Below, piece after piece: positions 14,801 through 46,940 of a DNA stretch of 64,000 nt. Each line of letters starts with the position of its first letter. Position 1 is the first letter of the stretch. This stretch comes from Mytilus edulis (lineage: Eukaryota), in NCBI RefSeq assembly GCF_963676685.1, contig NC_092350.1:35216001-35280000 (forward strand), in the 5' to 3' direction. Under the pieces are notes generated by a model. It did not search any database. It was not told the DNA's origin and saw only the letters and a list, made by a program, of their open reading frames with translations. The position numbers were made by a program, and so were the translations under genes.

Positions 14801-17800
14801 ACACAGACTGACACACATATTTTAAATCTTTCTTTTCTAAATTCTCTTCTTCAATTTTGAAGATCTCTGAATTTATTATTTTTGAAGGTGGCTCTGACAA
14901 CACATTGGTTGCTTTTCTTTTACACGCAGTTCTGAAAAATTGACGTTCTAATTTCTGGACACTGATAATGAAAATATTATATTTCTTTTTAAAAATGAAA
15001 ATATGGTATTTTATACTGCCAAAATCTGCTATGAAATTTTAATAAAGCGAAAATGTATTTTATACTCGTGACAGTTGACTTGTATTTGCATTATAATTTT
15101 AAGAAAAATTGTTTTATAGTCTCTCAAAACTCTTTATAGAGTGGCTCTTGTTAACTTGTATTTCAAAAAGCTGTATATTTTATATGTAACAAGTGGCGAG
15201 ACTTTAATAAAGTATTTGTCTTGTCTTGTCTTGATTTAGGTAAAACATATTAACAGGTAAATGTGGCGCAATTCCATTTCATTTATTGGCGCAATTAATA
15301 CCATCAAAATAAAAGAGAGTGGCGCAATTAATACCTTTTCAAAACTGCAATTGGCGCAAATTGATTCTGCCCATATTTAGATACATTAAGAGCAATATTC
15401 AGAGAAATTAACAAAGACCTAATAGGGAATAATAACTTTCATAGTCAAATCAGTTTTACAACCTGAAATGTATTCTCTGTGACCTGTGTTGATAATATCA
15501 ATGAATATGCACTTTATATTATTTCTCCTCAATCTTTATTTGAACTTTACTTTATATACCTTTTTTTGTTAAAATTGATGGCCATTTGTCTTTTCAAAAT
15601 ATATCCCTTTCAGAAGTTCATTTTAGTACTTTTCTTAAAACTGTGATTTTTCTTATAAAAACATGTATACTGAAAATCATGATGACATATTTTACATGTA
15701 TGTTCAAGCATATTTTCGTATATTTGGCATATATTAATTAAAACTAATCCACACAAAATATATAATCTGTACCAGAGCTCGCCATGGTCTGTGATTCTTC
15801 CAAAGTTTACCTAGGTACCAGTCACTTTGGTTTTCTACCAATCCTATTGCCTAAAATAAACAGGATCAACATTCATAATTCATAGCTTAATATCAACCTG
15901 ACAATAAATAGTAAGAATATATTATCTCAAATACACAATAAAAAAAATTGTCAAAAATAAAACTTGTTATCCTTAAGCTCCTTATATTATTTATTGAAGT
16001 TACATTTTTTTTACTATTTGTTCATGTCAGAATATCTATTTTAACTGCACTCTTTCAAGTAGATTTACTGGTCAACTTGTTTTACATAGTAATAAAAATA
16101 GAAAATGTTGGATATATATGTAGAAGGTAACAATTAACCTTAATAAATTATCTGAGTTTTCTATTGGTTTTTTTTTTTTTTTGCATTACTTAAACTTGTG
16201 TTTTCTCTTGTTCAGATTAGGGTGTATTTTTATTGTTCATTTTTTTTCAAATATCAATCTCTTGTCTGTTCCTTCTTTGATAAAGGCTGTTATAACCATT
16301 ATCATATAGATTTGAATGTACAACTGCATTATTTTCATTTAGACTTGGAAAACCATTGTACTTCTGTTCACTTAAAGCTTTACCTTGGAACATTTCATTT
16401 ATTCGATTCCCTTATTTTCAATGACCTTATTTACTATTTTTCATTGTTTAACGGTATGGAAATATTGTAATTTGGTTAAACAAACAAAAAAATTAGAATA
16501 AAAATATTGTAGTTAAAGATTTGCCTTCAACAATTGGCGATATGACATTTACAAATAATTTCACTGGGAATGTAATCCCATAAATAACAGTAATTTTGAA
16601 GTAGGTGTTTTTCTTTCTATAGTGTTGTCTATTGAATATTAGTAATAAAAATAAGTGACATAAATATATAAATTGCATAAGAATTACATGTATACAAACA
16701 ATAATAAATATTAACCTTCTTGCCCTTTAGAATGCTGAATATCTTCCACAGTTCAGCAATATCTGTAGCAAATGTCACATCTGTATCTAATACTATAACC
16801 TAGTGAAATGAATAAAACATTTTCCTTTTAATTATAATATGTCAAAACAGAAAAACTTTCCACTGCATCGACCAATAATAGTTGTTTAGTAAGCATCATT
16901 TTATCAAATGGCCCAAGTTTATGGCAATAATTTTCAAGCCCATGACTCAAAGTTGGTGCAACTTACAATCCAAAATTTATTAATCTAATTTTTAATAGGG
17001 AAGTGTTAAGCATAAACAATTAATGTTGCAATGAAGTAGAATCAATACAATATGTATCATGTGTATGGTTACATCAATTTCACTAGAAACCTGTTAGTTT
17101 TCCTTCACATAAATAACCATTGTTTAAATTTTGCTAGCTAATTAAAACTAACAAAATTTGGCATTGCATGAAGGACATCTGACACGCCAGATTCATTAAA
17201 CATTTTTTGTTGGTCAAAAATCCAACAAATCATGTTTTGATTGTAAATTTTAAAGGATCTTTTTTTTGTCTATTATTAAAGTTTTACCTCAAATAAGGTG
17301 ATCATATAAATAAATTTATAGGTAATCTTTGACAAAGTATGATCATTTTGAATTTCTTAATACCTACCTTGGTGAGATTTTGTGGTAAAGTTTTTGGTAA
17401 TGTTAACTTCATCAAACCAAATACTCCTGAGTAATGTTTATTGGATATCCATACTACATCCTCCTACAATACAACATGCACACATATATGTTTTAAAACT
17501 AAAAAAAATCACAATTAGACTATATGTCAGCTCAAAACTCAGATCATGATTAAATAAACTCAGAAAATGCTGAAATAAACTCAGAAAATGCTGAAATAAA
17601 CTCAGAAAATGCTGAAATAAACTCAGAAAATGCTTAAATAAGTTATCATTATCTGTATTCTTACTTTAAAAAAACACAGCATAATTATCTTTTTATTTCA
17701 CAGCATATACATGATATAAGAAAATATAAATTAGAATTACCTGTACTTTGTCTGTTGAGTAAAAACTGAAATTTACTGAAATTAAGAAAAATTGTGTTTT

Positions 17801-20800
17801 CAATGAAACTCATTTTATGAAATACTTAAATACAATGAATTGACAGCAACCAGACTTAAATACAAGAGATTGACAGCAACCAGAATTAAATACAAAAGAT
17901 TAACAGCAACCAGATGTTTTTCATGAATATGATATTTGCTAATCTAAACCCTCAAATAGGATCAAACATAAAAAAGAAATGAATACTTGTACGGTTCATT
18001 AATGGAAAGGTCAAAATCAGTATCACTTTTCTCTACTAAAAGGTCTACAAATCAACAACGCTGAAAGCTTAAAAATGGTGAAAATCATTAATAGTGCTTT
18101 TCTTTCACATGTTTCAGGCAGTGTATGGATGCCAGATGGAAAAATAGTTTAATTGGTTCTTATCCTGAATATGCATGGATATTTGCCACAATTAAAACAC
18201 CTTAACTAATACCAAATCATTTTTCCTATGTACATGTACAAAATCACTGTTCTTTTTGCACCCATATGACTGTGCACTCTCCCCAACTAATTATGTTCCT
18301 TCAGTTTTCTAAACTGATGACTTTCAGCCAGAGCTCATACCAATGTAAAAGAAGGATAAATGTGTGTGAAAAGATATGGCTCTTTATAGACAAAGGAGTA
18401 GGTTCAGTAAGACCCCATTTTGGCCCCAAAATATAGAAGTTTTGCAAAATTGTGAAAATGTAATCCTTTAGCTATTTATTGGAAAGTAAAATGCTTCTGC
18501 TACACAAATATGGTCTGTTTTTGACAATACAATGCACATATATCGGGTACTAACATCATTAAGTCATGCTAAATTACTGAAATCTTCACAATTTTAGCAT
18601 TTTGGTTTAAATTTTAGACGGTTTCCGTCTCAAATGAAAGTGGCTGCATTCGTGTTCATGCATAATATTGAAATGTAAGTTATATTTAATGATAATACAT
18701 GACATATATAAAGGTTGAGGATGAACACGGATGTTTCACATTCATTTTTGACAAAAACCATCTGAAAAATTACGATTTTTTGCATATTTGATAGATTTTT
18801 CATATTTTTGCTTGAATCGGAGGGTTTTTAATGACTTAATCAGCTAAAATCTTTCACATACTAATTGAATCAATTGAAATAGACACTTAAGTGTTTAAAA
18901 AGTGTCCAAAATCTTTCGTTAGATGAACCTGAAATTTGAGGCCAAAATCAGCCCTTACCGGACCTACTCCTTTTGTAATTTTTGTTCAGAGATTTTTTTT
19001 TATGGATAAATGTATTCCTGTAATATACTTTTTCCTGTGTCACAGAAATAATTTCAAGTTATCAGATTCAATTAAGTTCAAGCGGATGAATAACATTTTG
19101 ACAAAATTTTACCCTAATAAGGACTAAAATCCTTACAAATTACTCATATAAATAAATGTAAATACCTTCAGGAACATTCCATGTTTCAAACAGCTGTGTC
19201 AAAATAAGTTCTGCTATATGATCTGATATAAAGTGGAAGTGGAGAGGGTTCTTTCTGTAGAACAATACACTTTTAATTAATGTGACAACACTCCTTGTGG
19301 CACTGTGTCCAGCACAAACAATGGCTATGTGTATTACCTGTAACGAATAATATCAAAGTTTCGTTGCTGATATTTCTACTCAATCTACATTATTATTTTT
19401 AGAAAGGACATAAGGAATGAAGATTATCAACTGTCCTGTACAAATCTTTCGTACAAAGTTTTATTGCATTCATATATTTTAGTGGAAAATTATTGTGTAT
19501 CACACTTCCCAATTTTATATTTCTTATTCGCATTTTGATATTTCTTGTTCAGAGTTTACCTATCTAAATAGTTTTTATTGCCCACCTACCTCACACTTGG
19601 GTATTTCCAGTTCAGCGTTAAGACATCTTATTAAAGTTTTATTGCCATTATATGTTGTACCATTCTGTACAGCAATACTCATCTGTAGGCCCATTAGTTT
19701 ATTTCTTGTTTTACTGTTATATTAAAAAGATACAATTATAGATGAAACTTATGAAAGATAAAAAAAAAAAAAAAGCTACAATTGTTTGCACCTATCCTAA
19801 GTCAGGAATCTGATGTTCAGTAGTTGTTATTTGTTGATGTGGTTAAAACATGTTTCTCTATTCTCATTTTGCATATATATTAGACCATTGGTTTTCCCAT
19901 TTGAATGGTTTTACATTTGTATTTTTTTAGGCCCTTTATGGCTTGTCTGTTTGGCGTGAGCCAAGGCTCCGTGTATATCTATTGAATTATACGTGTACTA
20001 TGGTAGCAAGATGCATAGATTTAAAGTATATAAATTACAATGAATTAATTAGTTTTTATCCTCAAAAAACAAGAATTTTTAATTATCAAACATTTAATTT
20101 GGTATAAAATGTAGTTTATTCATATTTTGAACAGAACACATAAACATGACATATTAACATGATTAACGTTTAGAAGAAAGAGGTTAGTTAGTGTTTGTGT
20201 TTAAAATTTGACAACAATACACATGAAAAATTTGTTTCATATTTTGCTTGTCAGATCATTTTATAGCCAACCATAGGGTATGGGTTTTTCTCATTGTTTA
20301 AGGCAGTACATTTGCTTATAATTACATACATTCACTTCATTTGAACTTTGGTGGATAGTTGTCTCATACATGTATGGCATAGGCAGTTTTATTTTTATAT
20401 TGTTCAAATTAACCTATTTGTGCAAGATTATAGGATTCATTGTACATGTAAGGTCCTTATTATCATTTGTACCTCAGTTGCTTCCTGAGGACTTTGTTTT
20501 CTTGATCTGCTTCTTTCAATCTCTGTGCAAGTCTGGACTCCAAAATTTGCCCAGCTTGACCGTCATATTTTGGGATTTCTATAATAAAAATGAAAATAAT
20601 AAATATGTATCATTAAGAATTTGCATTGATGTATTAGTGTTCTATGTTCACTTCATAAGTCTTCTGAAAAATTGACCTTTTGAGTAATTTATATTCATAT
20701 TTGAATTTTACAGTAAATGTATTCAATTGATAAATATGTCAATATGTTTTACCTACATTTTACATGATACACAATCATCATGATCATTACATTCCAGATC

Positions 20801-21141
20801 ATTAGTTTATGACCAAATTTATTCATTTCAATATATAACTGTAGTTGTATACTTTTCCTAGTTTTTTTATATACCATGTTGAAAATAATCAGGCAGCGGA
20901 CACAAATGAGAGATGAAGAAATCTAAAATTTATGAATAGCAAACATTTTGCGTTTGGGAAACATTTTGATACATGTAATGGCAATTTGTACAAAATCTAT
21001 TATTTGTCTTTCTAATTCACTCTACAGATAACATTGATAATTACCATCAGTAGTTAAAGCTAAGTAAACCAAAATACATGTTGGAAATGCTCCTATTATC
21101 ACTAACACAGCCAAAGTCTGCTTTCTCATTCTTATCAGCAT
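5863..21141 (-). CDS. LARGE: LARGE xylosyl- and glucuronyltransferase, 18 coding exons, ~721 aa. Exons: 21141-21045, 20578-20473, 19713-19590, 19337-19166, 17775-17741, 17463-17368, 16799-16716, 15850-15773, 14373-14242, 12951-12826, 12582-12424, 11792-11484, 10860-10705, 9999-9893, 7498-7426, 7253-7129, 6630-6532, 5950-5863
   Basis: All introns are GT-AG with consistent phases; total 2166 nt. N-terminal type II anchor [29 protein letters not shown], coiled coil ([14 protein letters not shown]), GT8 motifs ([48 protein letters not shown]) and GT49 motifs ([60 protein letters not shown]). Confidence 0.96.
7526..8962 (+). mobile_element. Composite Helentron/HINE-like elements in a LARGE intron
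   Basis: Same 5' box as 2721, internal tandem units and (GAC)n. A second repeat-bearing unit runs ~8380-8962. Confidence 0.6.
9310..9781 (+). mobile_element. HINE-like element with two ~170-bp internal repeats
   Basis: AAACAAGAATGTGTCC start, duplicated core, degenerate tetranucleotide tract and GGGGCATAAAA end. Confidence 0.55.
14424..15372. mobile_element. Non-autonomous TIR element with 8-bp TSD in a LARGE intron
   Basis: Ends GGGC...GCCC. TSD ATATTTAG at 14416-14423 and 15373-15380. Repeated TGCGCCA motifs at the left end are mirrored by TGGCGCA at the right end. Confidence 0.85.
17552..17641. repeat. Minisatellite, 21 bp x ~4
   Basis: AAATAAACTCAGAAAATGCTG repeated. Confidence 0.9.
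17827..17914. repeat. Minisatellite, 30 bp x 3
   Basis: TAAATACAA..ATTGACAGCAACCAGA repeated. Confidence 0.85.
18392..18973. mobile_element. Non-autonomous TIR element (possibly Kolobok-like)
   Basis: TIR AAAGGAGTAGGTTCAGTAAG versus CTTACCGGACCTACTCCTTT (18/20). Superfamily is tentative. Confidence 0.75.
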
Positions 21142-21695
21142 AGTGATAACCCATGGTCTCTCTCACTACATTGCATACTATTCTGAAAAATGAAGAAATA
21201 AAAATATGAAGCTTTATTAATCTTCTCCATGTTTTCTGGTCTAGATATTTCCATACTTTCATCACTTTAGAAAAAGTGAAGAAAAAAAATACAACAAACT
21301 AATGTTTCATTCTTTGGGAAGAAAACATTGTCATGATTATTGTCAGTGATTGTATCTTCAGCCTTTTCATCAGCATTCAGAGGAATTCAATAAACAAATA
21401 ACTTTGCAGAATAACCTAAACAAGTTATGTCTTGTATGTTGAAATATTCTTAAATAATTGCTTTTGTAAATTGTAAATATCATTGACATGTCCATCTTGT
21501 TCATTCAAACAGATTGAAAATGAAGTCAGGCGCGTAGCTCCCTATACGCTAACACGCAGTTGCGTGCACATCGATTCGGCATGCAAAAAAAAAAATGGCA
21601 AAATAAAAATTTATAGATTGAATGTTAAAGGAAACACCTATTTTGTCACTTTTTAAATTGATGAAATATCATTAAATAACGGCATTTGGTTTCAA

Positions 21696-21796
21696 AATAA
21701 AAGTGTTATTGGAGATTGTGACAAAATCGGACAGTAACTTGTAAAAGATACAAGTTACTGTCCGATTTTGTTATAATCTCCAATAACACTTTTATT
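21696..21796. repeat. 101-bp palindrome (48-bp arms, 5-nt loop) abutting the 18S fragment
   Basis: 21696-21743 is the reverse complement of 21749-21796 with 2 mismatches. Confidence 0.92.
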
Positions 21797-22286
21797 CGTA
21801 TATTAAAGTTGTTGCAGTTAAAAAGCTCGTAATTGGATCTCGGGTCCAGGTTGGCGGTCCGACGCCTATTGGTTACTGCCTGCTCCTGACCTACCTCCCG
21901 GTTTTTCGCCCTTGGTGCTCTTGATTGAGTGTCTCGGGTGGCCGGAACGTTTACTTTGAAAAAATTAGAGTGTTCAAAGCAGGCAATATCGCCTGAATAA
22001 TGGTGCATGGAATAATGGAATAGGACCTCGGTTCTATTTTGCTGGTTTTCGGAGCTCGAGGTAATGATTAAGAGGGACTGACGGGGGCATTCGTATTACG
22101 GTGTTAGAGGTGAAATTCTTGGATCGCCGTAAGACGAACTACTGCGAAAGCATTTGCCAAGCATGTTTTCATTAGTCAAGAACGAAAGTCAGAGGTTCGA
22201 AGACGATCAGATACCGTCGTAGCTCTGACCATAAACGATGCCAACTAGCGATCCGCCAGAGTTGCTTCAATGACTCGGCAGGCAGC
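21797..22286 (+). pseudogene. Dispersed 18S rRNA gene fragment (~490 bp, V4-V5 region)
   Basis: Contains universal 18S blocks CGTATATTAAAGTTGTTGCAGTTAAAAAGCTCGT, TTTACTTTGAAAAAATTAGAGTGTTCAAAGC, GGTGAAATTCTTGGA, GCGAAAGCATTTGCCAAG, CAAGAACGAAAG and GATCAGATACCGTCGTAG. Truncated at both ends. Confidence 0.97.
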
Positions 22287-22673
22287 ACTCAGTCTATGTA
22301 GTTTTTGGAGCACATTTTACAGTTTACGGTTCATCAGTTTGGAATGAAATGTACCAATCGGCATTAGAATTATCAGAACCCTTCGATATCGTTGAAAATA
22401 TGCCGAGGCGATGTGGTCGACAGACTACCAGAGCCAATCATCCTGCAAACACGCCAAAACAGTATTGGAAAGTCTCATTATTTTTTGCGTATGTTGAAAA
22501 CAAATGTACGATCAACAATGAACGACGACAGTTACTAGCATTACTGCATATTCATCGGCATTTCAGTGTGAATATTGACAGTTAAAGTAATAGAGAAGTT
22601 TGTTTCTGCCTAGACACGAAAAGCAGATTTTGGACAATTTTGAGTAAATTCTGTATCATAAATATGTGAATTT

Positions 22674-23034
22674 TAATGTGCGTATTGTTATGCGTTTACT
22701 TTTCTGCATTGGCTAGAGGTATAGGGGGAGGGTTGAGATCTCACAAACATGTTTAACCCGCCGCATTTTTGCGCCTGTCCCAAGTCAGGAGCCTCTGGCC
22801 TTTGTTAGTCTTGTATCATTTTAACTTTTAGTTTCTTGTGTACAATTTGGAATTTAGTATGGCGTTCATTATCACTAAACTAGTATACATTTGTTTAGGG
22901 GCCAGCTGAAGGACACCTCCGGGTGCGGGAATTTCTCGTTGCATTGAAGACCTGTTGGTGACCTTCTGCTGTTGTCTGCTCTGTGGTCGGGTTGTTGTCT
23001 CTTTGGCACATTCCCAATTTCCATTCTCAATTTT
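22674..23034. repeat. Unclassified ~360-bp interspersed repeat, copy 1 (nested in the hAT element)
   Basis: Highly similar to 52044-52403 (TAATGTGCGTATTGTTATGCG...CCATTCTCAATTTT). A partial inverted copy is at ~63435-63570. Confidence 0.85.
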
Positions 23035-24370
23035 GTTGTTTATGTATTACTCTATTCAGAAGATTTATTAATAGTTTTACATTCATAATTTTTTTATAAG
23101 TCCTATCTACAGATAACTCCTCTTTTAACCGTCCTATGACCGAAAACCGAAAAAGAAAACATTTTTCTGCATAAAAAGGTCCCAAAAATTTTTCGCCTCG
23201 CTCCGCTCGGCAGAATTTGCTTGCACATGGTTTCTATCTAGCTACGCCCCTGGAAGTATAACATGTATAATAGAGTTTTCTCAAACAAAATAATGTGTCA
23301 TGCTTGTTGAAGTAATATTTGGACATTTTTTATTCAGAAACCTTTCACAAGTTAAAATTTTGAACTTAATTTGATTTTGATGGATAAAGATTACATTAAT
23401 TTATAAATGTGTTTTAAACATTCAACATGTGTGTACCATTGATGATCAATTAACAATTTACTTTATTAGCATGATTAGCATGTTTTCTTTTTCTTTTTTT
23501 CTTTGTTATAGATTATTAATAGATAAATAAGCTTTTAATTACTATTAAATGAATGAACTGCCCTGGTTGACCTGAGGTAATTTGAGGAAAACATGATATT
23601 GGACATTTAGACCTAACATGCCTAAAGACCTTTGCTTTGTGACATCATTCATTTTCTTTTACGAAAAATGCATTAATTTGATAATTATGTTCATATGTAC
23701 ATGTAAAGCAAAATTTTGTCATCTGCACCAAGACAATCATAAAAATATTTCATAACTACAATATATGTACCATAAAATATTGTCCATATCTATGAAAAAA
23801 ATTCCAGAGAAGGACACAGTTTCATTGTGAAATTTGGTTTTTATATAGACAATATTTCACAGATTAATACTTAGTAAAATGTATGAAATTTTGTCCTGTT
23901 AAAGGGAGGTAATATTTCATTGTATTGAGACAATATTTCATAGACAGATTATCATGAATTTTGTATCATGAAGGAGAGGTTACAACATATATATGAATTT
24001 GGATAATGATCAATGATGATATCATTAAAATAGTTTATTTGATTGATAATAACAAATAAACACAAATTAATAATAGATGCAGGTATAAACAGAACAGTAT
24101 TTTTGCTCATCGATGGATGGCAAGGATACAAAACACTTTTCGAATATCACCGTCATAAAGTTGTAACGTAGGGCATTTCTGAAAATCAGAACAGTTTTCA
24201 GAAGAAAGGCAAATTCATTTTGTTTACAAAATATTGAAATGTATTCTAAATGTTTTGACAAGAAAAAGTGATGTCACAAAAACCCCTTGTATTAAGTTGT
24301 AATTCATGAAGATAAACTTGAAAAAGTACTGCATACTTGCTTTACAAAATAATTTCAGTAATATAAATCT

Positions 24371-26827
24371 AACCAGATGCTCCACAGGGTGCAGCTTTAT
24401 ACGACCGCAGAGGTCGAACCCTGAACGGTTGGGTCAAGTATGGACACAACATTCAAGCTGGATACAGCTCTGAATTTGGATTGTGATTAAATACTTGACA
24501 CAGCATAGGTTTCTGACACAGAATGAATGTTGTCTAATGAACTCAAATTTTTTTTTTGCTTTTGAGCAATTCACTATGCTGTTAAATATTAATCCTCTCA
24601 AAAAAAAATGTTTGAAGAAATTTTCTTTTTAATTTATCTGAACTGAGAAAAATTGAACCCCCCCTCCCCCAATTTTTTTGTTCACCTCCCCCTTCCCCTT
24701 ATTCCAAAAATGATCTCAATTCAAATTTCTAATGGAGTTTACAACAATAACTACTCATTTAAATACATCATAAAGTATTTAAATAAAAAATGTCATACAG
24801 CCATGGTTAAAATTAATATTAATTAATAGTAACTTCTAAAAAAATAAATGGGGAATATGTCCAAAGGGACACAGATGATGCCTCTGCTAGCATATAATGT
24901 TATAAAGGGACATAGCTCAAGAACTGTAAAAGTGAAGCTGCCAAAAATTGAACTTAAAACTTGTAAAGGAGCATAACCCTAGAATAATAATCAAAGTGCT
25001 TGTAATCACTAAATGGTAAAGATTGCTTTAATTTATCAGTTGGTAGTAAAAGTGAATATTGCACTGTATATTGTATATATAGCATTGATTTAAGTTGATT
25101 CAGCTATTATTCTTGACAAAGAAAGATAACTCCAATTTTCAAAGATTTCATAAAGCATTGGTTTAAGTTGTCATAACTTCATCTTTAACTTACATTTTTA
25201 ACAGAATAATAGATACAAGTACATTTCCCTGTGTTTTAAAGAATGCAAGAGTAACCCCTGTTTTTAAAGCTGGTGAAAAATTCATGGCAACAAATTATAG
25301 ACCAATTTCTGTACTTCCAGTTTTATCAAAACTTTTAGAAAAGCATGTTTCAAAACATTTGTTTGACTATCTTAAAAGATTAGATCTTTTACACCCAGCA
25401 CAGTCTGGGTTTCGACAAGAACACTCTTGCCAAACTGCCCTTATCAATATCATAGATAAATGGATACAGGATATGAATGATGGTAATATCAACTTAGCAG
25501 TCCTGTTGGATTTTAAGAAAGCTTTTGATGTAGTAGATCATGATATCCTCTGTAAAAAACTTGAAATTTATGGATTTGATAATACTGCTGTTTCTTTTTT
25601 TCAATCGTATTTGAATGAAAGAACTCAACAAGTACAAATTGGTAATGCTCATTCTGAAAAACTTCATATCAAGTATGGTGTTCCCCAAGGCTCCATATTA
25701 GGCCCCCTTCTGTTTATATTATACATCAACGACCTTCCTATTTATATGAAAAATTGTTGCACTGATTTATATGCCGATGATTCAACCTTACATCTTTCTG
25801 GTAATTGTTATCAAACTCTTCAGTCAAAGGTACAAGAAGATTTACATGGTGTAGAGGCATGGTGCAATGATAACAATATGTTCATCAATAAAAATAAAAC
25901 AAAATATATGATTATTGGAACGAAGCAAAGAGCAATGCCACATTACAATGAGAGTTGTTTAACTATTAACAATCAAGTGATACAATCTTCCACATGCGAA
26001 AGTCTTTTAGGCATTAAAATTGACCCTTCCCTCACATGGACAACCCAAATTGACTTGATCTGCTCAAAAATATCATCTAGACTATATCTACTATTAAAGA
26101 TTAAAAAATTTCTAAATCTAGACTGCAGAAAATTATTCTATAATGGTTATATCTTGCCACTTATTGATTATTGTTGTATAGTGTGGAGTAGTTGTAGCAG
26201 TGAGGGTTTAAAAAGGATATTAAAATTACAAAAGAGGGCTGCTAGATTAATACTAGAAACAGACCCATTCGCTCCTTCTGCACCCTTATTCAAACACTTA
26301 AACTGGATGACAGTTGAACAGAGAATAAAATATCATAAGTTAGTGATGACATTTAAGTGTATTAATAATGATGCCCCATCATATCTTACTAACAAGTTTC
26401 ATTATGTTTCAGACAGAAATCCGTACCCCTTGAGAAATGCTGTTCAAGGAAACCTCATACTCCCTAAACCAAAAACAGAATTATTCAAAAAATCTTTTAT
26501 GTATTCTGGACCATACTTGTGGAATAATTTGCCAATACAGTTAAGAAATATTACAAATATTAATTCTTTCAAATACAAAATAGCAGATCATTTATTGAAA
26601 TCAACCTAACTGTATAAATAATATAAAAAACTGATCATGTCATCATGTTTATTTTTTCATCACATTTTATCAAGTTGTATTGAACATTATTATCACACTT
26701 GACTTTTTATGCTAATGTATGTATGCAATGTACTAGTATATGTTTGTGTTTTGTTTGATTTTTCATTACGAGGGCCTCAGGGAAGATTAGTTATATAGCT
26801 AACTGTGTAACCCTCTTAAAATAAAGT

Positions 26828-26858
<31 letters not shown>

Positions 26859-27235
26859 ATTCAAATACCATTCTGGCTAAAGAAAGATAACTCCAATTTA
26901 TTGTCTTGAAACTACAAAAATTATTGTTTTTGGCCCCTTTTTGGCCCTTTATTCCTAGACTGTTTGCCCCATAACCCTTAAAATATATCCCAACCTTCTA
27001 CTTATGGTATTAAACAATGGTGTACAATTTCCTAAACCTTAGGGAACATAACCCACAAAATCAATCCCAAACTTCCTTTTTAGGTTATAAACATTGTATT
27101 AAAATTTTATTAATTTCTATTTCCAAATGTACTTATACTAATGTTATTATCTGGATACAAATATTTATTTTACAAATATTTATTTATTGGCACACACTCA
27201 ATTACAATAATTGGCAACGGCCCATACAACTAGTA
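24371..27235 (+). mobile_element. Composite HINE-like region interrupted by the LINE at 25171-26858
   Basis: Same 5' box as 2721 and 7526; the host repeat unit resumes immediately after the LINE tail. Confidence 0.6.
25171..26858 (+). mobile_element. 5'-truncated non-LTR retrotransposon (L2/CR1 group) with an open RT frame to 26609 and a (GTT)n tail
   Basis: RT motifs NYRPISVLP, QSGFR, DFKKAFD, GVPQGSILGP, YADD. The frame is open from ~25173. The 3' UTR ends in AATAAA plus (GTT)n. The element splits a host repeat unit at AAGTTG^ATTC. Confidence 0.93.
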
Positions 27236-27384
27236 TACTAATAGTAATGATGCAGCAATTAAACAATACTACATAGCATATCATTTTGCACATTTCGAAC
27301 AATGAAATGTGCAGTTATAAATATCAATATATATAGGTTAATTTGTAAGAATAGACTACTGACATAAGTATATTGTATGTTATA

Positions 27385-28761
27385 CAGTACAATTTTCGCG
27401 AAAGCCATCCCAAACTCCATACACCGAGTTTTTTCCTGGTGTGACACCAGGAAACTCCGACATCACTCCCTAAATTCTCGGAGAAATTTGGGAGTATTCC
27501 CTCCGACTTCCGCGTAAATCTGTTACCTTTTGTTTATTGTATTAGCGACATCTCTCCCAGTCTGGAGTGACGCGGTGTCACACCAGGTAATTAATTGCCC
27601 TAATCCTTCTGATCTATGCCGGCACGCGACAGTCAAGGTATGCCAGATTTCTAATGTAATTAAACAATTGTATTTCCTGTCTATTGATTATCAGTTTATA
27701 TCTGATTGCTTGAAACAAATGAAAGATTAAAATAAAAATAAAAACGTTGTTAATTCTTTTAATTACTCTGTACATCTAAATCAATTTTTAAAAACAACTA
27801 TATTTGATTTTGACTTCCATTTTTTATCAGTAAATAACTATTTAATTTACTAAAAGAGATATAATTGTGTAACAATAAATGGAGACTAACGCTGAATAAA
27901 TTAGGGTAGTTTAAAGAAAAGTGACACGTCTCAAAGTTTTTTATACAAGTAAAAATGAAAATATTATTCACTATCTGTTATGCTAATAAGTAAGCCATTT
28001 CCATTTTACAATTACAAAATAAAAGTTTTAAAAAGGAAAAGGTTGTTGTTATTAAATGCTTTCAATTGCATTAAAGTTTTATAAAAAAAAAATCTATACT
28101 TGATTATGACCTCGGGTTTTTTTTTATCGGTAATTTATATAACTTACGAAAAGAGACATACTTGCGTGAAAATAAACGGAAATTAACGCTGAAGGTATAA
28201 AATGTGAGAAAGAAAGAAAATTACGTGTCTTAAAACTTGTATATGCAAGAAAAAAAGAAAATACTTTTCACCATTCTTTATGCTTAATAAGTCTACAGCA
28301 TTTTCTCTTCACGATTTGTTAGCTTTACTTTAGGATAAATAATACATTTCGGCTACAACAGGAATACTTCTATAGCTGCATCAACTCGTCGTTGCATAAT
28401 ATTTATTTACGCACAATGAATGTAAACTTTTGTGTTGTATTTAGAACAGTGATCTTTAAATATTTTTAAAGCAATTAATTGCCGTGGGAAGACGATACGC
28501 ATCTCAGTGATCAACAGTGCGTAGTTGAACTTGAACTTGAACTTATTACAAAGGTAATAAATCTGGCTAATCCGATGATGTTGTCACGCGTCATTAATTT
28601 TCAGTACATCCGATGGGCAATAAACCAATAAACAGCCACGCGGTGTTGGGAGAGAATCTTTGGAGGAAATTGGGAGTATAATCCCTGATTCGCCGTGTCA
28701 CACCGCTACACTCGGAAATCCGTGATTAGAGTTTGCGATTACATACTCTCTGGGCGTACTG
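27385..28761. mobile_element. TA-flanked non-autonomous DNA element (Tc1/mariner-like ends)
   Basis: TA-CAGTAC...GTACTG-TA. Inverted subterminal blocks (CAAACTC, GGTGTGACAC, ACTCCC). Internal degenerate ~300-bp duplication (~27790 versus ~28090). Confidence 0.6.
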
Positions 28762-28949
28762 TAGCTTTATAAGTACATTTTTCCTTAATTCAAATGATTG
28801 ATTAATAAAAGATGATATTAATCAAAGTGTTTTTCTACACTTGTTATTAAGTAATAGTTTGATATATTCATCCTCAGTTTTAGATTGTTTGTCATAATTT
28901 TTAAATTTGGACAATTTTGATATAAGAACATTTCTTTGTGATTCATATA

Positions 28950-29112
28950 ATCACAGGAGGTTGAAATCCTATCAATGAGGGTCTATAAATATGTCAACTC
29001 GACTATCACAGTAGAGCTTCTCTTCGCTTCTCTCTACGAGAGAAGCTCTACTGTGATAGTCGAGTTGACATAATTATAGACCCTCATTGATAGGATTTCA
29101 ACCTCCTGTGAT
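28950..29112. repeat. Near-perfect 163-bp palindrome (~73-bp arms)
   Basis: ATCACAGGAGGTTGAAATCC...AGAGCTTCTCT is mirrored with one mismatch. Flanks are TA-rich with no clear TSD. Confidence 0.92.
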
Positions 29113-29784
29113 ATAATATTGCACAAAAATTTTGTGCAATGCAAGATAAAATGTTTTTCGTCTTCTATATGTATTGCATATGTAATTTTGTCCCTTAGAT
29201 TATTACACATAAACAAATGTGAAACTTGTACTGATGCTACAGAAGGGAAATGGTATAGAGAATTAATATTTTAGAACCTAGAAAATGTTTCGCTCGAACT
29301 GTCGAATAACAAAATCAAAAATTTCAAATGTGATTCATTTTGCAAAAAAAAACGTATAAAGAAGAACTTTGCAGATACAAATATATTCTACTGTACATAG
29401 TGGCTTCAATTTTGTAGGATTAGATTACAGTTTCAATACCTTTATAAAACCTATGTGTTCATTATGAAAAATTATAGATAACTTTTTTTCAATGTATTTT
29501 CAACTGGACCTTCTTTCTGAGATTTATGGCAAAGGAGAAGGAAAACAACAAACAGGTAACCAGTAAAAAGAAAATCACCAATCACCAAAAAAAAAGACGA
29601 AACGGTTATAGTTTTTTACCGTCTATAAACACAGCTGTCATTCTCTTTTATAGATGCTTTCTATTTTTATAACAATTCGTTTACCTTACAGTTGATGCCA
29701 AGACATTGAAAATTTAACATTTTTTTAATAAAAAGATCATACTTTTTGGTATTCAGATTCATTTTGCCAATATTTGTGTTGACC

Positions 29785-32700
29785 ATGGCCTCAGCTGCAT
29801 CAGATTTTGTGAGAGAAGTATGGGAACGCTATCAGAAGATAGTGAGGGAAAATCCCGAAACTGTCAGTCAACTAGAATCCACATTCAAAGTTGTGTCATA
29901 TGTTATAGCAGGTAAAATATCTTGTTAATGAAGAATGTTTACAAGAAATCTTAAAAAGGGGTGGATAACTCAGATTTTAATCCTACTTTCAGTTTCATAT
30001 GATCAACAAAATCCTCTTTGATAGGCAACATCATGCATACATAATTTATTTAATGGTTTATTCTTCTCATATATATCATCTTAAAAATAGGGATGAAACA
30101 ATACTCTTATTGAATGATTCTGCTTTTTTTTTAAACAAGCCAAAGGTCATGGTTCAGATTTTATCATTGTTACATTTCTTGGTTTCCAACTTTAAAGTCA
30201 TCTGAAACGAGTGATTTAATCAGATTGGTGAAAATTAATATTTATCCAATTCTTGAACCCATGCATGTATATATCATCAACTTAGTCATGTTAGTCTTCT
30301 GTGCTAGTCCAAATAATTATGACGTCTTGAAAGGCTATTATAATTTTTTTCTTTGACGCCTTCCTTCGGCGTCAGAGAAAAAAATTAGAATAGCCTTTCA
30401 AGACGTCATAATTATTTGGACTACTTCTGTGCATGATTTTATCATTTATACAAATGACATTATGTATCGTATAATTGTCATTTTTTTTCTCTCTGTTTGT
30501 TATGATGTGAAAATATAGCTGCTCATTACTTGTCGTTTTTGAAGCCAAAGTTTACCGATTGTCACCTTATAGTAAACAATCAACAAAGAAGCATGGATAA
30601 TGGAAACATGTTTAACATGTACAATAAGATAATAGTTTATTTCAGTGACAGATCCATGCGTATTGCCATCACCTGATTTTTATGAGGGGTCACTCTAAGG
30701 TCACTTTGCATATGGAAAATAGACCTACAATCATATTTTAACCCCCACAAACAAAAAATATCTTATAAGTCACATTCATCATGTTCGTAGGATGATCCTG
30801 GAACCATTGAAACTGTTTTTGAACTAAGATCAATTATTTTACATGCATTAATTGTGAGGGCTTTAAAAAGAAACAGTAGAAAGATAATTTTACCAACATA
30901 AAAAATACTGGAACAACAACCACTGGCGGATCTAGAAATTTCATAAGTGGGGGCACACTGACTGCCTAAGAGGGGGCTTGCTATTGTCATGCTTCAGTGA
31001 TTCACTATATAAGCAACCAATTTTTTTCCAAAAAAGGGGGGAGGGCCCCTCTCTTAATCGGCTGAATTGAAGTGTAAGTTGGTGTGGTCCAAATCTGATA
31101 GTTGCTACTGGGCAACCTTTCTTTTTGGGGGACTTTTACATAATAAATGCATGTATGTATGGAATCAGATATGTGTATGTATGAACATTTGATGAATGAA
31201 AAGAGACAGACACTTAAAATGCCAAATAGAACAATAAAAAGTCACCTAAATGTGATTAGGTTAAAAATAGTCATTTATGATCTCTTTCATGTCTTTTATA
31301 CATTTTTAACCAATTAAGTCTTTTTGTCTTTCAGGTAGATTTGAAGATTCCCAGGTTTTGTCAGAGCTTGTCTACTTGGCATCCAATTTACTGATTTTAC
31401 TAAATGATACCATCTTCAGACAGACAGCCAAAGTTTTAAAAAACATAGTAAGTCTGTCAAATTTATATTCAACATGTACATTTGTATTTATATTAATGTT
31501 TAAAGTTGAAGCTAATAGTAATACTGAATTTGAACAAGCAATTAAAATCTGTGATGTCAAAGTAATACATTTTATCTTCAATAACCAATGAAAGTATCAC
31601 AAACCAGAGCAAAACATGCTGTCCACTCTGGGCTTCCAACTAAACAATTAATCGAATATAATTTTTTATACTGGTATTTATCATTTAGTCAAATTGTAAC
31701 TAACTACTTCATCAAGATTTTAGAAGTAAGTTGTGGTTGGTCGTCATAGTTGAATACTGAGAAGTAGCGAATAACATCCTAGTCTTATAGGCCAAATAAA
31801 AAAAGATGTGGTTTTCTTATTACCCTACCCTCCATATTTTTAAGCTAAAGAAATAGCTTACCCTTAAGTTGTTGTTTTTTTCCATTTTTTTAATACGCAC
31901 TGTTCAGAATGCCTCTCCTTTAGACTCAATGTAAAAACAAATGGTAAAATAAAAAAAAAAATCCCTACCTACATGACCTATAGCTATCTTCCCTATTTTT
32001 ATTAAAGATGCAATATGAAACACACATACCATTTTTTTTGGCCAGATTGAGAAAAAAAAATAATTTTGGACAGATATTGGATGTATAAATCTGAGTCAAA
32101 CAGTGTCATATGTTTACAACTTTCAAGTTTATGCAAAGTAAATGACTGACTTTTGTAAATGCTAAACTATTAAATCAATGTTTTACATGTACAAGTATGC
32201 TCTTTCTTATTTCAGTCTGTTCCAGTAGAAAGATGGAAAAGATTTTTAACAGTTTTACAGTATGCAGAAGTTTTTCTAGAGATGGCAGCACAGAGAGCAT
32301 GGGGAGAAACAGGAAGATGGTTCATTATATTAGTTGTACAGCTCACAAAGTAAACAGGCAATCTCTCTACTCATTTTTCGGCTTTATGTAGATATATATA
32401 TAGAATGACCAAATTTCCATAGAAAAAAGTAGTATGGCCTGGTATGTTAAAACTTTGATATGAAAAGTGACATAATTGGTATATATTGTAATTGCCCCTT
32501 ACCATGCAATAATAGTAAACTTATTCAAGCCTTTCAGAATAATATTAATTTTATTGATGTCACTTTGAGCTAGGTAAAGCTCTTGAATATTAATTTGACT
32601 ACTAGTATTTGACAGTTAGATTTTTTGCATTAAATGTAAAAATTTTAAAGCCCCATTGTTATATTTTACAACAAAATTGAACAATGTTATTAAAATACTG

Positions 32701-35700
32701 ATGTCATTTCCCTATATATTATTTGGAAGATTTAAAAAAACAGTTGATTTTCAGGGCTCACGCTACCAGGCGACTTGGGCGAAGAAGTCGCCCTCCCGAC
32801 CTTCACTTCGCTTTCCCCGACCCCCAAAAGCGAAAACAAGTCGCCTTGTTCTTGACGAAAGTCGCTTTCAGTCGCTTCCATCATCAGACATTTTCAATTT
32901 TTACCAAGTTGATGAAACATTAATTTTTAACTGATAATTAAAGAAATTCAGACATAAACTATTCATTATCTTTAGAAAAGAGGTTGAAGCATTGTCTTCG
33001 CAGTGTGTATCAGGTTATTTGATAAAAATACAACTTTTTATCACTTCGTGCATTTTCGCAAGTTCCGGTGCTTGTTACTCGAAAACGTACATCAACCTAA
33101 ATTTTGGCGGCAAAATAAGTTTGTTACTTCATTTAAAGGTGATAAAAGTTGCCTCCAGTAAATGTTTAATCCATTTATTGCATTAAAACCGTCATGTTCC
33201 TTTCCAAATAACTTGTCAAACATCGTTTATTTTTGTAAATTTTCTTGCATTCTTCCGCCATTGACCGATTTCTAAACTACGGATCTGAACCGGACCAGCT
33301 ATGACCGAAATCCGTACTTTTACAATAATTACTACAGACGCACGGATGGAACAGCTGACAGAAGAATATTGATCCCAAAGGGAAAAATTACGCATCCCAC
33401 ACGCATTAAGAGACTTTTGGTTACATCTAATTGATTGGTGTATATAATTCCCTATATTTTTTATGAATGTTTCAAACTATTGATTAAAGTTGCTTAACTC
33501 TGAGACTATTATACTAATATCAATATATTATGGCCCAGCTTAATAACTTTTATATTTTTTTTATGAGAAACACTGAATTTCATACACAAGATAATTTTTA
33601 ATTAAATTGTAATTGATATAATTTCTTTACATTTTTTAAAATAAAATTATTTTTTTTAGTGCTAGATATTTAGTTGGTAGTTTCTCACAAGAACCTTAGT
33701 AAAACTTAAACAACTTTTAATTTCAAATGTTACTTTAATTGTAATTTTTTACTCATATGAATTGAACAACATAAAAAGAACATTATTTACATATGGCCCT
33801 TTGTACTATTGTAAAATCCAAACATTGTAGCCCACCCGCGCGAATGAGCACTTCTCTTTCAAATCTCACCACTTCTCCCTATCAGTTTCAAAAAGAGAAG
33901 TCACTTCTCCCTATAATTCTGAAGTAGTGTGAGCCCTGATTTTCAAATTCTTATATATTCTTTCATTTTATTTTAGGACAGTTATAAGGATGATGCTGCT
34001 TTGGAAACATAAAGGAGGGTTTCAGACAAATCCTCCTCAGCCTCCACTTGATAGGGACCAACTTTTACCCAAGTTAAAGAGAAGTGTTTCAAAGGTAAAC
34101 AGTAGTAACGTTAACTGATGCTTGAATTATGTTAATACAAGAACAGATGCACTACATTCCAAATTCAGCATGAATACAACCATATTGTGATGTTTTTACT
34201 CATGAAGTCCACATCAACAATAGATATCCTGATAAGATTTTACCATCACATTCTTTTGTTTTCTTAGCAGCAATTTAAAAAGAGACCAAAAGAGTTTGTT
34301 TTATTTTGTTTTGTTTTTTTGTTGGTTTTTTTGTTGGTTTTTTTTTTTTTGGGGGGGGGGGGGGGGTATTTTAAATATAAGAAGATTAAATTTTGATCAT
34401 TTGAAGATTTCCCTGAGATTTTCAAGTTTTTAACCGGATTTTTGTGACAAAAATGTCGGTTATTGATTTGGGGATGTACGGCGGGCGGCCGGGTGGTCAA
34501 GCAGTCAGGCTGCCGGGCGGGCGGCAATCAAATGTTGTCCGTGCATTAACTCATGAACCGTTCAGCCAAAGCTTTTAAAATTTTAATATGTTGTTACTGA
34601 CAACTAAATGAAGGTCAAGTTCAATAATGGCGATTTTGACCTTACCGTTCAGGAGTTATGGTTCTTGAAAGATTGAAAAATGGAGTTTTCAGTCGTGTCC
34701 GTGCATTTACGCATGAACTGTTCTACCAAAGCTTCCCAAATTTTAATATGTTGTAACTGATGACAAAATAGAGGTCAAGTTAAATAATGACGATTTTGAC
34801 TTTCACCGTTCAGGAGTTATGGTTCTTGAAAGATTGAAAAATGGTGTTTCCAGTCGTGTCCGTGCATTTTCTCATGAACCATTCAACCAAAGCTTTTGAA
34901 ATTTTTATATGTTGTTACTGATGACAAAATAGAGGTCAAGTTCAATAATGACGATTTTGACTTTTACCGTTCAGGCGTTACGGTTCTTGAAAGATTGTAA
35001 AATGGTGTTTCCATTCACGTTGTTGCGTTTACTCATGAACCATTCAATCTAAGCTTTTCAAATTTTAATATGTTGATACTGATGACAAAATGGATGTCAA
35101 ATTTGATATTGACGATTTTCACTTTCACCATTCATCAGTAATGGTTCTTGTGATATTGCCAGGACACAAATAAATATTAATAAATCCGGTTTGCTGTTGT
35201 TGTGACAGCCTCTTGTTTGTTTTGTCTTGAAAAAAAGCATCTGGTATTGTCGAAATAAACATGATAAAAAGAAATTAACTATAATTTATATTATTTCCCT
35301 AAGATGCAATCTCCAAGATCATTATCACTTACATTCAATCTTATCTATAAAACTTTGTTAGAATGCCTATTGGTAGCAATGGGGTTTATAATACATTTAT
35401 AGCCATGTATTGCTATTTGTAAGAGAAAAAACAGGTATCTTGGAATATTCACCATTTCAAAATCCAATCCTGAAAATTTCCCTTGAAAAATTGCCTGAGA
35501 TGGTTGAACCAGGGGTGATGTATCATTCCTCGATTAGTATAAACATTGTATTACATGTATTATACATTTTTTATATTTTTGTAGGAACTACTTGATTTGG
35601 AAGAAAATTTAGATGGTGAAAATGAAAGTCCTACTTTTACATTGAAAAGTTCAGGCAAAGTAATGAGACGTCTTTCAACATGTAAGTTGAAGATTGTGCT

Positions 35701-38700: not shown

Positions 38701-39616
38701 AAAATGTATATGATTTGGATATGATTATTAAAAATCAAACCTGCAAATCAAAACATCTACAATATTTAATTAGAAGCTAAATTGAATAATTTTAACCCTG
38801 CCCCAAAGGGTTAACAAAAGTCAGAATATAAAAGTTATAATGTTTTATCATGTCAATGTCTATAACATTTTCTTGTTAATTTCAGAGTCAAAATATTGTC
38901 CACATTACAGTTTATATCTGACCATGTTCCATTAACTGGCTTAATTCTACGTAAGTATTATGGATTTTTGTAGAAATAAGAGCTATGATTTTATTTAAGA
39001 AATTTGAAGTTAACATCTGATGCACAGAAATAGCATTCCTCGTTTAATTAATATCTGAAAATAACAGTCACATGTGGGTACAAATATGTAAAACAAAAGC
39101 ATGTACAACTTAGGAGCGAGGTCTGCAGTAAAAGTGTAATAACAGCTGTATTTAAATGACTAAAAAAACAATTGAATGACCAGTGCATTCTGCTTTAAAA
39201 CCCTGATTTTACTATGGAATTAACAAAGTATTGTACAATTTATGTAGCATGCGATATGAAAAAGGATCATGTTGGTTAAATGTCAATTGGACAGCATCCC
39301 AACAACAGTGACCGAAATATTTTCAGCTGGGGGTCATCATACTGTCTCCAATAATGATCAAGTACAATGTCAGAAGCTCAGTTTAGGCAAGTTGTAAGTA
39401 AATCTGTTCAAGAGGACAGAAGTTAGACAAGACTAGGATGTCACCATTCAAGATGATTTACTTAGGCCATTCAGCTATGAGAAATTGTGAATATGCAGGA
39501 TTAGTGTTGAATGTTTTTGACACACTTTTACTAAATATTTTACTTTTGTTTCAGGTCCATTGGCACAGTACCTACCTGCCTGGCAGAAAGTCTATTTCTA
39601 CTTGTGGTCAACATAA
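29785..39616 (+). CDS. PEX16: Peroxisomal membrane biogenesis factor 16, 10 coding exons, ~354 aa. Exons: 29785-29911, 31335-31447, 32216-32349, 33977-34094, 35585-35681, 36259-36414, 37256-37328, 37999-38118, 38886-38950, 39555-39616
   Basis: Spliced frame of 1065 nt. Recognisable motifs [94 protein letters not shown] and C-terminal RPLAQYLPAWQKVYFYLWST. Confidence 0.95.
30305..30423. mobile_element. 119-bp fold-back MITE with 9-bp TSD
   Basis: Almost entirely self-complementary (TAGTCCAAATAATTATGACGTC...GACGTCATAATTATTTGGACTA). CTTCTGTGC occurs at 30296-30304 and 30424-30432. Confidence 0.9.
32752..33938. mobile_element. Non-autonomous TIR element with 5-bp TSD in a PEX16 intron
   Basis: TIR CAGGGCTCACGCTAC / GTAGTGTGAGCCCTG (14/15). 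TSD ATTTT on both sides. Subterminal AAGTCGC/CACTTCTC motifs. Confidence 0.85.
34427..35217 (-). mobile_element. HINE-like element with ~4 tandem copies of a ~160-bp unit
   Basis: Units start GTCCGTGCATT at ~34537, 34697, 34858, with a more diverged copy at ~35019. (GGCG)n tract and CTCTTGTT terminus. Confidence 0.7.
36415..37255 (+). other. U12-type (minor spliceosome) GT-AG intron in PEX16
   Basis: 5' splice site GTATCCTTTT. A branch-like TTTCCTTAAAT lies just upstream of the AG at 37254-37255 with no separate polypyrimidine tract. The reading frame requires this junction. Confidence 0.85.
36630..36830. mobile_element. Short MITE-like insertion with internal ATCCCGAAAT repeats, inside the U12 intron
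   Basis: G-rich and C-rich ends; CTCTGATATG is repeated at both boundaries (36621-36630, 36828-36837). Confidence 0.55.
37363..37497. mobile_element. Short MITE
   Basis: TIR CAGTGTTCTCCTCAG / CTGGGGAGAACACTG (14/15). Confidence 0.65.
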
Positions 39617-46600: not shown

Positions 46601-46940
46601 ATGTCTCTGTTCCAATGATTATATCAGGATTGGCGGTTTCGATGAGAATAGGTAGTTCTGTTCGTTTGTTCTTGATACTTTGGAAGTTTATTATCAGAGT
46701 TCTTAGTGCTTTTCTGTTCTTATTTCCAGTTGTGTTTTGAGTTACCCTCTTTGGCGATGATGCAGCTAAAGGATCTCCAAGACTTATGTTGCTGTCATCT
46801 TGGTTGATTGATGACGACTTATTCCCATCCGAGATGGACAACATAGAAAAAGTGTTACTATCTGCAGAGTCTATCAGGTCATACAAAACAGTTGTGTGGT
46901 TTGGTGCATTACATACCATACAATACCAAGAGACAGAAGT
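43660..46940 (-). mobile_element. Near full-length, disrupted CR1-group LINE (partial PHD-like finger, APE endonuclease, RT) with a (GAA)n tail
   Basis: APE motifs INFQSI, GTETWL, GGDFNLP, LDL, SDH; RT motifs NYRPVSLT, DFAKAFD, GVPQG, FADD. Frameshift near 45645, premature TGA at 44410 and a deletion near 44385. The (TTC)n tract on the plus strand runs 43660-43734. Confidence 0.93.

What the first reader, a model, noticed from the sequence alone, without database searches (positions are those of the whole stretch)
21141..29785. LARGE and PEX16 are head-to-head, as human PEX16 and LARGE2 are
Seen: the two genes diverge with start codons 8.6 kb apart and only transposon-derived sequence recognisable between them. 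Known (recalled, not checked here): human PEX16 and LARGE2/GYLTL1B are adjacent and divergently transcribed on 11p11.2. Inference: the pair may date to the bilaterian ancestor and be held by a shared bidirectional promoter, linking dystroglycan glycosylation with peroxisome biogenesis.
Basis: partly seen in the sequence, partly recalled or inferred. Interest (0 to 1): 0.8.

Follow-up and report, generated by a model that had tools for sequence, protein, structure and literature searches.

The report
Ancient divergent LARGE–PEX16 gene pair
In the blue mussel the dystroglycan glycosyltransferase gene LARGE and the peroxisome gene PEX16 sit back-to-back exactly as reported, and the same neighbourhood is found in other molluscs, a brittle star, an eel and man, so it is a very old but otherwise ordinary conserved gene pair whose spacer in the mussel has been swollen by transposons.

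Summary
The window is Mytilus edulis chromosome DNA. An intact 17-exon LARGE gene lies on the minus strand (ATG 21141). An intact 10-exon PEX16 lies on the plus strand (ATG 29785). No other gene lies in the 8,643 nt between them.

About two thirds of that spacer is transposon-derived. One piece is a 1.7-kb LINE fragment about 100% identical to at least 10 other copies.

The pairing is old:
- Two metagenome contigs carry the same head-to-head pair with only 624 and 574 nt between the start codons. One is from a heteroconch-like bivalve, the other from an unidentified animal.
- Consecutive accession numbers or locus tags put the two genes side by side in four cephalopods, a brittle star and a moray eel (LARGE2).
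- Published human gene lists place PEX16 next to LARGE2.
- The pair is broken in sea urchins (same chromosome, 330–470 accessions apart) and in mites.

A shared bidirectional promoter is plausible ancestrally. No evidence supports a functional link between peroxisomes and dystroglycan glycosylation.

Verdict: a new member of a known kind (ancient microsyntenic divergent pair), of moderate interest.

The parts
5863..21141 (-). LARGE (xylosyl- and glucuronyltransferase) gene, 17 coding exons, apparently intact
   Evidence: Exon-wise tblastn with Octopus LARGE P0320 covers residues 8-734. Solved LARGE1 matches at E 3e-50 and 3e-22. PF13896 matches at 11475-11681, 10729-10863 and 7125-7256. Inner exon edges are approximate.
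21045..21141 (-). LARGE coding exon 1 (signal-anchor N-terminus), donor gtaatt
   Evidence: Read directly. The same ...DG|gt exon end is seen in L043 and L031.
21135..21200 (-). LARGE leader. A polypyrimidine tract and AG (21184-21183) look like a splice acceptor. Three upstream ATGs follow (21176, 21171, 21154), and the first uORF's stop overlaps the LARGE ATG.
   Evidence: Read directly. Whether the acceptor is used is not known.
21142..29784 (.). Spacer between the two start codons, 8,643 nt, about 66-68% repeat-derived
21526..23252 (.). Repeat element with at least 5 other copies at 93-97% identity. This copy alone carries a hairpin (21696-21796) and a 490-nt 18S rDNA piece (21797-22286, 99% identical to the rDNA arrays).
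23253..24370 (.). Stretch with no repeat match among the scored candidates
   Evidence: Only 40 candidates were scored, so low-copy repeats are not excluded.
24371..25170 (.). Repeat, 92-93% identical to other copies
25171..26858 (+). Young 5'-truncated LINE with an RT ORF (25284-26609) and a (TTG)10 tail
   Evidence: About 100% identical over 1.68 kb to at least 10 copies on other chromosomes. RVT_1 E 2e-31. Tandem repeat.
26859..27158 (.). Repeat fragment
   Evidence: matches at C7:2596330-2596543.
27381..28540 (.). 1.16-kb non-coding repeat, at least 40 copies at 90-97% identity
28935..29127 (.). Palindrome, 89-nt arms, 91% complementary
   Evidence: It gives weak miRNA-like Rfam hits below threshold.
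29128..29784 (+). Unique DNA next to PEX16, the likeliest place for the PEX16 core promoter (inferred)
   Evidence: No repeat match. Sequence. No transcript data.
29785..39616 (+). PEX16 gene, 10 coding exons: 29785-29911, 31336-31447, 32216-32350, ~33978-34094, 35585-35680, ~36255-36413, ~37255-37326, 37997-38119, ~38884-38955, ~39557-39616
   Evidence: PF08610 matches. tblastn with M. edulis and M. californianus PEX16. Splice sites read.

Best explanation
This is a divergently transcribed LARGE-PEX16 gene pair inherited from the bilaterian ancestor. In its compact form the two start codons lie about 0.6 kb apart, so both genes must start within one short shared promoter region. A break there would damage both genes and the target is tiny, which together explain why the pair has lasted. 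In Mytilus edulis the pair is kept, but successive transposon insertions have stretched the spacer to 8.6 kb. The latest insertion is a LINE fragment still about 100% identical to its relatives. Removing the recognisable repeats leaves about 2.7-2.9 kb. Shown: gene identity, orientation, spacer content, and the presence of the pair in other lineages. Inferred: the shared promoter in the compact form, and that in the mussel each gene now most likely fires from its own proximal promoter (near 21.2-21.5 kb for LARGE and 29.1-29.8 kb for PEX16). No functional coupling of the two proteins is needed or shown.
For: Gene models and orientation. The window is M. edulis: the contig length of 93,447,462 equals that of the record holding XP_071120682.1, and the exons are identical. 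Spacer make-up. Head-to-head pair on metagenome contig L043: PEX16 ATG at 512 (minus), LARGE ATG at 1137 (plus), 624 nt between. Its PEX16 is closest to Mactra and Sinanodonta. Head-to-head pair on L031: ATGs at 572 (minus) and 1147 (plus), 574 nt between. Both PEX16 matches were confirmed with a PEX16 HMM at iE 5e-9 and 8e-9. Consecutive accession numbers or locus tags on the same chromosome: Octopus bimaculoides XP_014777233/4 and ..235; O. sinensis XP_029638629/31 and ..632; O. vulgaris CAI9725107 and ..108; Argonauta GAB1608491 and ..492; Amphiura XP_072033911/12 and ..914; Gymnothorax KAJ8247698 (GJAV_G00249290, LARGE2 by 89-90% identity) and KAJ8247699 (GJAV_G00249300). Control for this reasoning: M. 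edulis XP_071120682 and ..683 are physically adjacent genes in this window. Human adjacency.
Against: Orientation is shown only for the mussel and the two metagenome contigs. For cephalopods, the brittle star and the eel, adjacency is read from numbering, not from coordinates. The human orientation is from memory. No transcription start site was mapped in any species. The pair is not kept everywhere: in sea urchins the genes are 330-470 accession numbers apart on one chromosome, and in two mites the upstream neighbour of LARGE is an ERp44-like gene. Any constraint is therefore not absolute. The phylum of L031 is unknown. Intergenic DNA shows no alignable conservation.
Confidence: 0.8

Rival explanations
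1. The bidirectional promoter still exists in the mussel. LARGE would have a non-coding first exon next to the PEX16 promoter, and the 8 kb of transposons would sit in its 5'-UTR intron rather than between the two promoters.
For: There is a very good acceptor-like tract (ttcatatttttatttcttcatttttcag) 41 nt upstream of the LARGE ATG. L031 and L043 also show acceptor-like and donor-like motifs between the PEX16 ATG and the LARGE ATG. A GTAAG donor-like motif lies on the minus strand about 95 nt upstream of the PEX16 ATG. From memory, vertebrate LARGE1 has non-coding 5' exons.
Against: Such motifs are frequent by chance in 31% GC DNA. The 384 nt just upstream of the LARGE ATG are unique and could hold a promoter themselves.
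Confidence: 0.3
2. The adjacency in mussel and man is a coincidence or arose independently, helped only by both genes lying on the same ancestral linkage group.
For: With conserved macrosynteny and random shuffling within chromosomes, a few tens of shared adjacencies between two genomes are expected by chance (my estimate, about 2 per linkage group). In sea urchins the genes are on one chromosome but apart.
Against: The same pair recurs in at least seven independent samplings across bivalves, cephalopods, an ophiuroid, a teleost, man and an unplaced animal. The orientation is divergent wherever it can be seen. Chance per lineage is of the order of 1e-3 or less.
Confidence: 0.03
3. The pair is kept because the two products work together, so that co-regulation links peroxisome membrane biogenesis with dystroglycan matriglycan synthesis.
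For: None found. The literature searches for PEX16 with LARGE2 or GYLTL1B returned only deletion and GWAS gene lists.
Against: The genes have been separated in echinoids and mites. After the vertebrate duplications LARGE1 lacks a PEX16 neighbour (Rhineura: different chromosomes). Most conserved divergent pairs are functionally unrelated (general knowledge).
Confidence: 0.05

Closest known systems
Human PEX16 / LARGE2 (GYLTL1B) neighbours at 11p11.2
   Same: The same two orthologous genes are directly adjacent (PMC4199189 gene order; variants 4.3 kb apart). From memory they are divergent, a few kb apart.
   Different: The vertebrate partner is the LARGE2 paralogue, whereas the mussel has a single LARGE. 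The mussel spacer is 8.6 kb and mostly transposons.
Ancient conserved microsyntenic gene pairs of metazoans (Irimia et al. 2012, Genome Res, PMC3514665)
   Same: An adjacent pair of unrelated genes is kept across phyla for more than 500 million years, with lineage-specific losses.
   Different: I could not check whether this pair is in that paper's lists, because no supplement is held. Neither gene is a developmental regulator, so the regulatory-block/bystander model does not obviously apply. A shared promoter is the more natural reading.
Bidirectional (head-to-head) promoter pairs, defined by start sites less than 1 kb apart
   Same: Orientation is divergent. Spacers of 574 and 624 nt between ATGs in L031 and L043 leave room only for one short promoter region. 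CCAAT boxes are present, which is a weak sign.
   Different: In M. edulis the ATGs are 8.6 kb apart. No start sites, no co-expression and no reporter data exist for any species.

Membership tests
Conserved ancient microsyntenic pair | The two genes are direct neighbours with no gene between them | tested here: met
   Only repeats, an RT fragment and an rDNA fragment lie in 21142-29784.
Conserved ancient microsyntenic pair | Orthologues are neighbours in several distant phyla | tested here: met
   Bivalve-like L043 and the unplaced animal L031 by sequence. Cephalopods, an ophiuroid and a teleost by consecutive accessions or locus tags. Man by published gene order.
Conserved ancient microsyntenic pair | Relative orientation is conserved | tested here: inconclusive
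   Divergent in M. edulis, L043 and L031. Not readable from accession order in the other species. Human orientation is from memory.
Conserved ancient microsyntenic pair | Not explained by chance given linkage | tested here: met
   The pair recurs in at least 7 samplings. My estimate of chance adjacency per lineage is about 1e-3 (argument in the report).
Bidirectional promoter pair | Divergent orientation | tested here: met
Bidirectional promoter pair | Transcription start sites less than 1 kb apart | not testable with these tools
ATG-ATG distance is 8,644 nt in the mussel, and 624 and 574 nt in L043 and L031.
Bidirectional promoter pair | Co-expression or shared cis elements | not tested
   No expression data. 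There is no alignable intergenic conservation, and the motif census is uninformative.
LARGE glycosyltransferase | GT8 domain followed by GT49 domain with a type II signal anchor | tested here: met
   About 74-76% identity to gastropod and octopus LARGE over the aligned exons.
PEX16 | Full-length match to the Pex16 family | tested here: met
   PF08610 exon matches. Identical to M. edulis PEX16 over most exons.

The most novel reading that the evidence does not exclude
LARGE and PEX16 form a bidirectional transcription unit more than 550 million years old, with a promoter core so tightly shared that it survives even when 6 kb of transposons are inserted. In the mussel the insertions would lie in a LARGE 5'-UTR intron. 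The two genes would be co-regulated in all animals that keep the pair.
Probability: 0.2. Interest if true: 0.55.

Novelty: new member of a known kind. Interest (0 to 1): 0.4.

Why it matters
It adds a well-documented case to the catalogue of gene neighbourhoods kept since the bilaterian ancestor. It comes with natural experiments: compact 0.6-kb spacers, a mussel spacer inflated 14-fold by transposons, and two lineages where the pair was broken. These make it a convenient system for asking whether divergent pairs persist because of a shared promoter or only because the breakable target is small. It also helps annotate LARGE2 versus LARGE1 orthology in vertebrates, since PEX16 marks the LARGE2 locus. 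It does not by itself link peroxisomes with dystroglycan biology.

Tried and rejected
- **The look-up of encoding contigs:** I replaced it with a metagenome scan and with accession and locus-tag order.
- Local scripts only read the window file as a BLAST subject and for CpG counts.
- **Joined spliced models:** none was searched. All searches used single exons or proteins returned by the tools.
- **Human contigs:** none was fetched or compared.
- **Literature:** PEX16 with microsynteny or bidirectional promoter, LARGE1 with LARGE2 and synteny, and the WGS prefixes of the metagenome contigs returned nothing useful. The Irimia 2012 supplements are not held.
- **Extended synteny with human neighbours:** I found no PHD-finger exon in 60 kb beyond LARGE, and nothing recognisable in 40 kb beyond the window. 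This is inconclusive.
- **Intergenic conservation:** local alignments of the L043 and L031 spacers against the unique mussel segments score no better than shuffles, and the motif census is uninformative.
- **CpG observed/expected profile:** it marks the transposons and the rDNA piece, not the promoters.
- **Placing L031 taxonomically:** its LARGE is 70-73% identical to every phylum tested, its PEX16 exon is at most 58% identical to any, and there are no Pfam hits downstream.
- **Melanotaenia accession numbers:** isoforms of one gene are 7-9 numbers apart, so numbering there does not follow position and I did not use it.
- **Weak PEX16-like hit in the mite contig L021:** the HMM did not confirm it.
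Full report
**What is in the window**

The window is G000:C7:35216001-35280000 of a 1.37-Gb, 31% GC genome. Three results identify it as Mytilus edulis:
- Its PEX16 exons are 98-100% identical to Mytilus PEX16.
- The contig length of 93,447,462 equals that of the record carrying M. edulis PEX16 XP_071120682.1.
- That protein matches the window exons at 100% over most exons.

**LARGE**

LARGE lies on the minus strand.
- The start codon is at 21141.
- Exon 1 (21141-21045) encodes a type II signal anchor and ends at a gtaatt donor.
- Exon-by-exon comparison with octopus LARGE covers residues 8-734 in 17 coding exons, down to a stop near 5863.
- Single exons hit solved LARGE1 at E 3e-50 and 3e-22.
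- Pfam Glyco_transf_49 matches three exons.

**PEX16**

PEX16 lies on the plus strand. Its ATG is at 29785 (accATGg), and ten coding exons run to 39616.

Both genes look intact.

**The spacer (21142-29784, 8,643 nt)**

Searching the spacer against the same genome and scanning for repeats and RNA families gives the following map.

| Coordinates | Content |
|---|---|
| 21526-23252 | Repeat with at least 5 other copies at 93-97%. This copy alone holds a 48-nt-arm hairpin and a 490-nt 18S rDNA piece, 99% identical to the rDNA arrays. |
| 24371-25170 | Repeat, 92-93% identical to other copies |
| 25171-26858 | 5'-truncated LINE with a 441-codon RT ORF (RVT_1) and a (TTG)10 tail, about 100% identical over 1.68 kb to at least 10 copies elsewhere. 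This is a very recent insertion. |
| 26859-27158 | Repeat fragment |
| 27381-28540 | 1.16-kb repeat with at least 40 copies at 90-97% |
| 28935-29127 | Palindrome with 89-nt arms |

This amounts to about 5.7-5.9 kb, or 66-68% of the spacer. Without it the start codons would be some 2.7-2.9 kb apart. No other gene was found.

The CpG profile marks the repeats rather than the promoters.

**Is the pair old?**

*Route 1: metagenome contigs.* A scan with the first conserved LARGE exon returned 31 animal contigs. A PEX16 HMM and tblastn found PEX16 first exons on two of them. In both cases they lie upstream of LARGE on the opposite strand.

| Contig | PEX16 ATG (minus) | LARGE ATG (plus) | Spacer | Source animal |
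|---|---|---|---|---|
| L043 | 512 | 1137 | 624 nt | PEX16 closest to the clams Mactra and Sinanodonta, so a bivalve lineage far from mussels |
| L031 | 572 | 1147 | 574 nt | Unidentified, 53% GC; its LARGE is 70-73% identical to every phylum tested |

In both contigs the LARGE N-terminal exon ends at the same ...DG|gt boundary as in the mussel.

Two mite contigs have an intronless LARGE. One of them, L021, is 92% identical to Dermatophagoides farinae LARGE. Their upstream neighbour is an ERp44-like gene, and no PEX16 lies within 5.8 or 10 kb.

*Route 2: numbering in annotated genomes.* I compared the public accession numbers and locus tags of the two proteins within the same annotated genomes.

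| Species | LARGE | PEX16 |
|---|---|---|
| Octopus bimaculoides | XP_014777233/4 | XP_014777235 |
| O. sinensis | XP_029638629/31 | XP_029638632 |
| O. vulgaris | CAI9725108 | CAI9725107 |
| Argonauta hians | GAB1608492 | GAB1608491 |
| Amphiura filiformis (brittle star) | XP_072033911/12 | XP_072033914 |
| Gymnothorax javanicus (moray eel) | KAJ8247698, GJAV_G00249290 | KAJ8247699, GJAV_G00249300 |

In each species both proteins are on the same chromosome-sized record. The eel LARGE is a LARGE2.

That such numbering reflects physical order is supported inside this window. M. edulis XP_071120682 is PEX16, and ..683 is the next gene downstream, at 49542-52570.

In four sea urchins the two genes share a chromosome but lie 330-470 accession numbers apart, consistently across species. 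The pair was therefore broken in echinoids.

For man, a chromosome-ordered list gives PEX16 next to GYLTL1B/LARGE2 (PMC4199189). Variants assigned to the two genes lie 4.3 kb apart (PMC12747543). The divergent orientation in man is my recollection.

Presence in spiralians, an ambulacrarian and vertebrates makes inheritance from the bilaterian ancestor the simplest account. My rough estimate of chance adjacency within a linkage group is about 1e-3 per lineage, which cannot explain seven recurrences.

**How it probably works**

With under 0.65 kb between start codons in two animals, both genes must start within one short region. A shared or overlapping divergent promoter is therefore the likely ancestral state. 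This, together with the small breakable target, would favour retention. That is inference, because no start sites are known.

In the mussel there are two possibilities:
- The promoters are now separate, one proximal to each ATG. I put this at about 55%.
- LARGE keeps a non-coding first exon beside PEX16, and the transposons lie in its 5'-UTR intron. I put this at about 30%. A strong acceptor-like tract ends 41 nt upstream of the LARGE ATG, but such motifs are common in AT-rich DNA.

Intergenic sequences of the three species are not alignable, and a motif census is uninformative.

**Function and novelty**

Nothing supports a functional link between the two proteins. The papers that mention both genes are deletion or GWAS lists. 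The pair has been split in urchins and mites. LARGE1 has no PEX16 neighbour.

No searchable paper describes this pair as conserved or bidirectional. The supplementary lists of the main microsynteny paper are not held, so it may sit unremarked in such a list.

It is a new, well-supported member of a known kind of feature.

**Limits**

- No human contig was used.
- Orientation outside three sequences, and all transcription start sites, remain to be checked.

Noticed in passing
window 21696-22334: A 490-nt piece of 18S rDNA (Rfam SSU positions 606-1116, 99% identical to the genome's rDNA arrays) follows a 48-nt-arm hairpin. Both sit inside one copy of a repeat whose other copies lack them. This is the subject of another finding.
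   Followed up: partly
window 21135-21200 (minus strand): The LARGE leader holds three upstream ATGs. A 13-codon uORF has its TGA overlapping the LARGE ATG. There is also an ATG-TAG, and a 35-codon out-of-frame ORF with a strong Kozak context (gagaccATGg) that spans the whole coding part of exon 1. If transcribed, they should damp LARGE translation.
   Followed up: no
window 25171-26858; also 43905-47006 (minus) and 41454-43152: A LINE family appears to be currently active, with at least 10 copies about 100% identical over 1.68 kb. A longer LINE with endonuclease and RT ORFs and another RT-bearing element lie between PEX16 and the next gene.
   Followed up: partly
window 49542-52570 (+): A four-exon gene encodes a 181-aa Cys-rich single-pass membrane protein (M. 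edulis XP_071120683.1). In the M. coruscus record CAC5385784.1 it is fused to PEX16 as a 517-aa model, which looks like an annotation artefact.
   Followed up: partly
window 55204-56820 (+): A single-exon 539-codon ORF with an F-box and leucine-rich repeats (Pfam F-box-like E 5e-9, LRR_4 E 3e-10).
   Followed up: no
L021:3553-4847 and L033:6097-9001: In two mite contigs LARGE is intronless and its upstream neighbour is an ERp44-like thioredoxin-domain gene (two copies in L033). This is a different conserved neighbourhood that replaces PEX16 in that lineage.
   Followed up: partly
window 28935-29127: A near-perfect palindrome (89-nt arms, 15-nt loop) lies 660 nt upstream of the PEX16 ATG. No other copy appeared among the scored genome matches. 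It gives sub-threshold miRNA-like Rfam hits on both strands.
   Followed up: no
G000:C3:80301718-80304952 (L005, L006): A second Glyco_transf_49 gene in the genome (E 1e-69, almost one exon) has no GT8 part nearby in the match list. It is probably the B4GAT1-type relative rather than a second LARGE.
   Followed up: no
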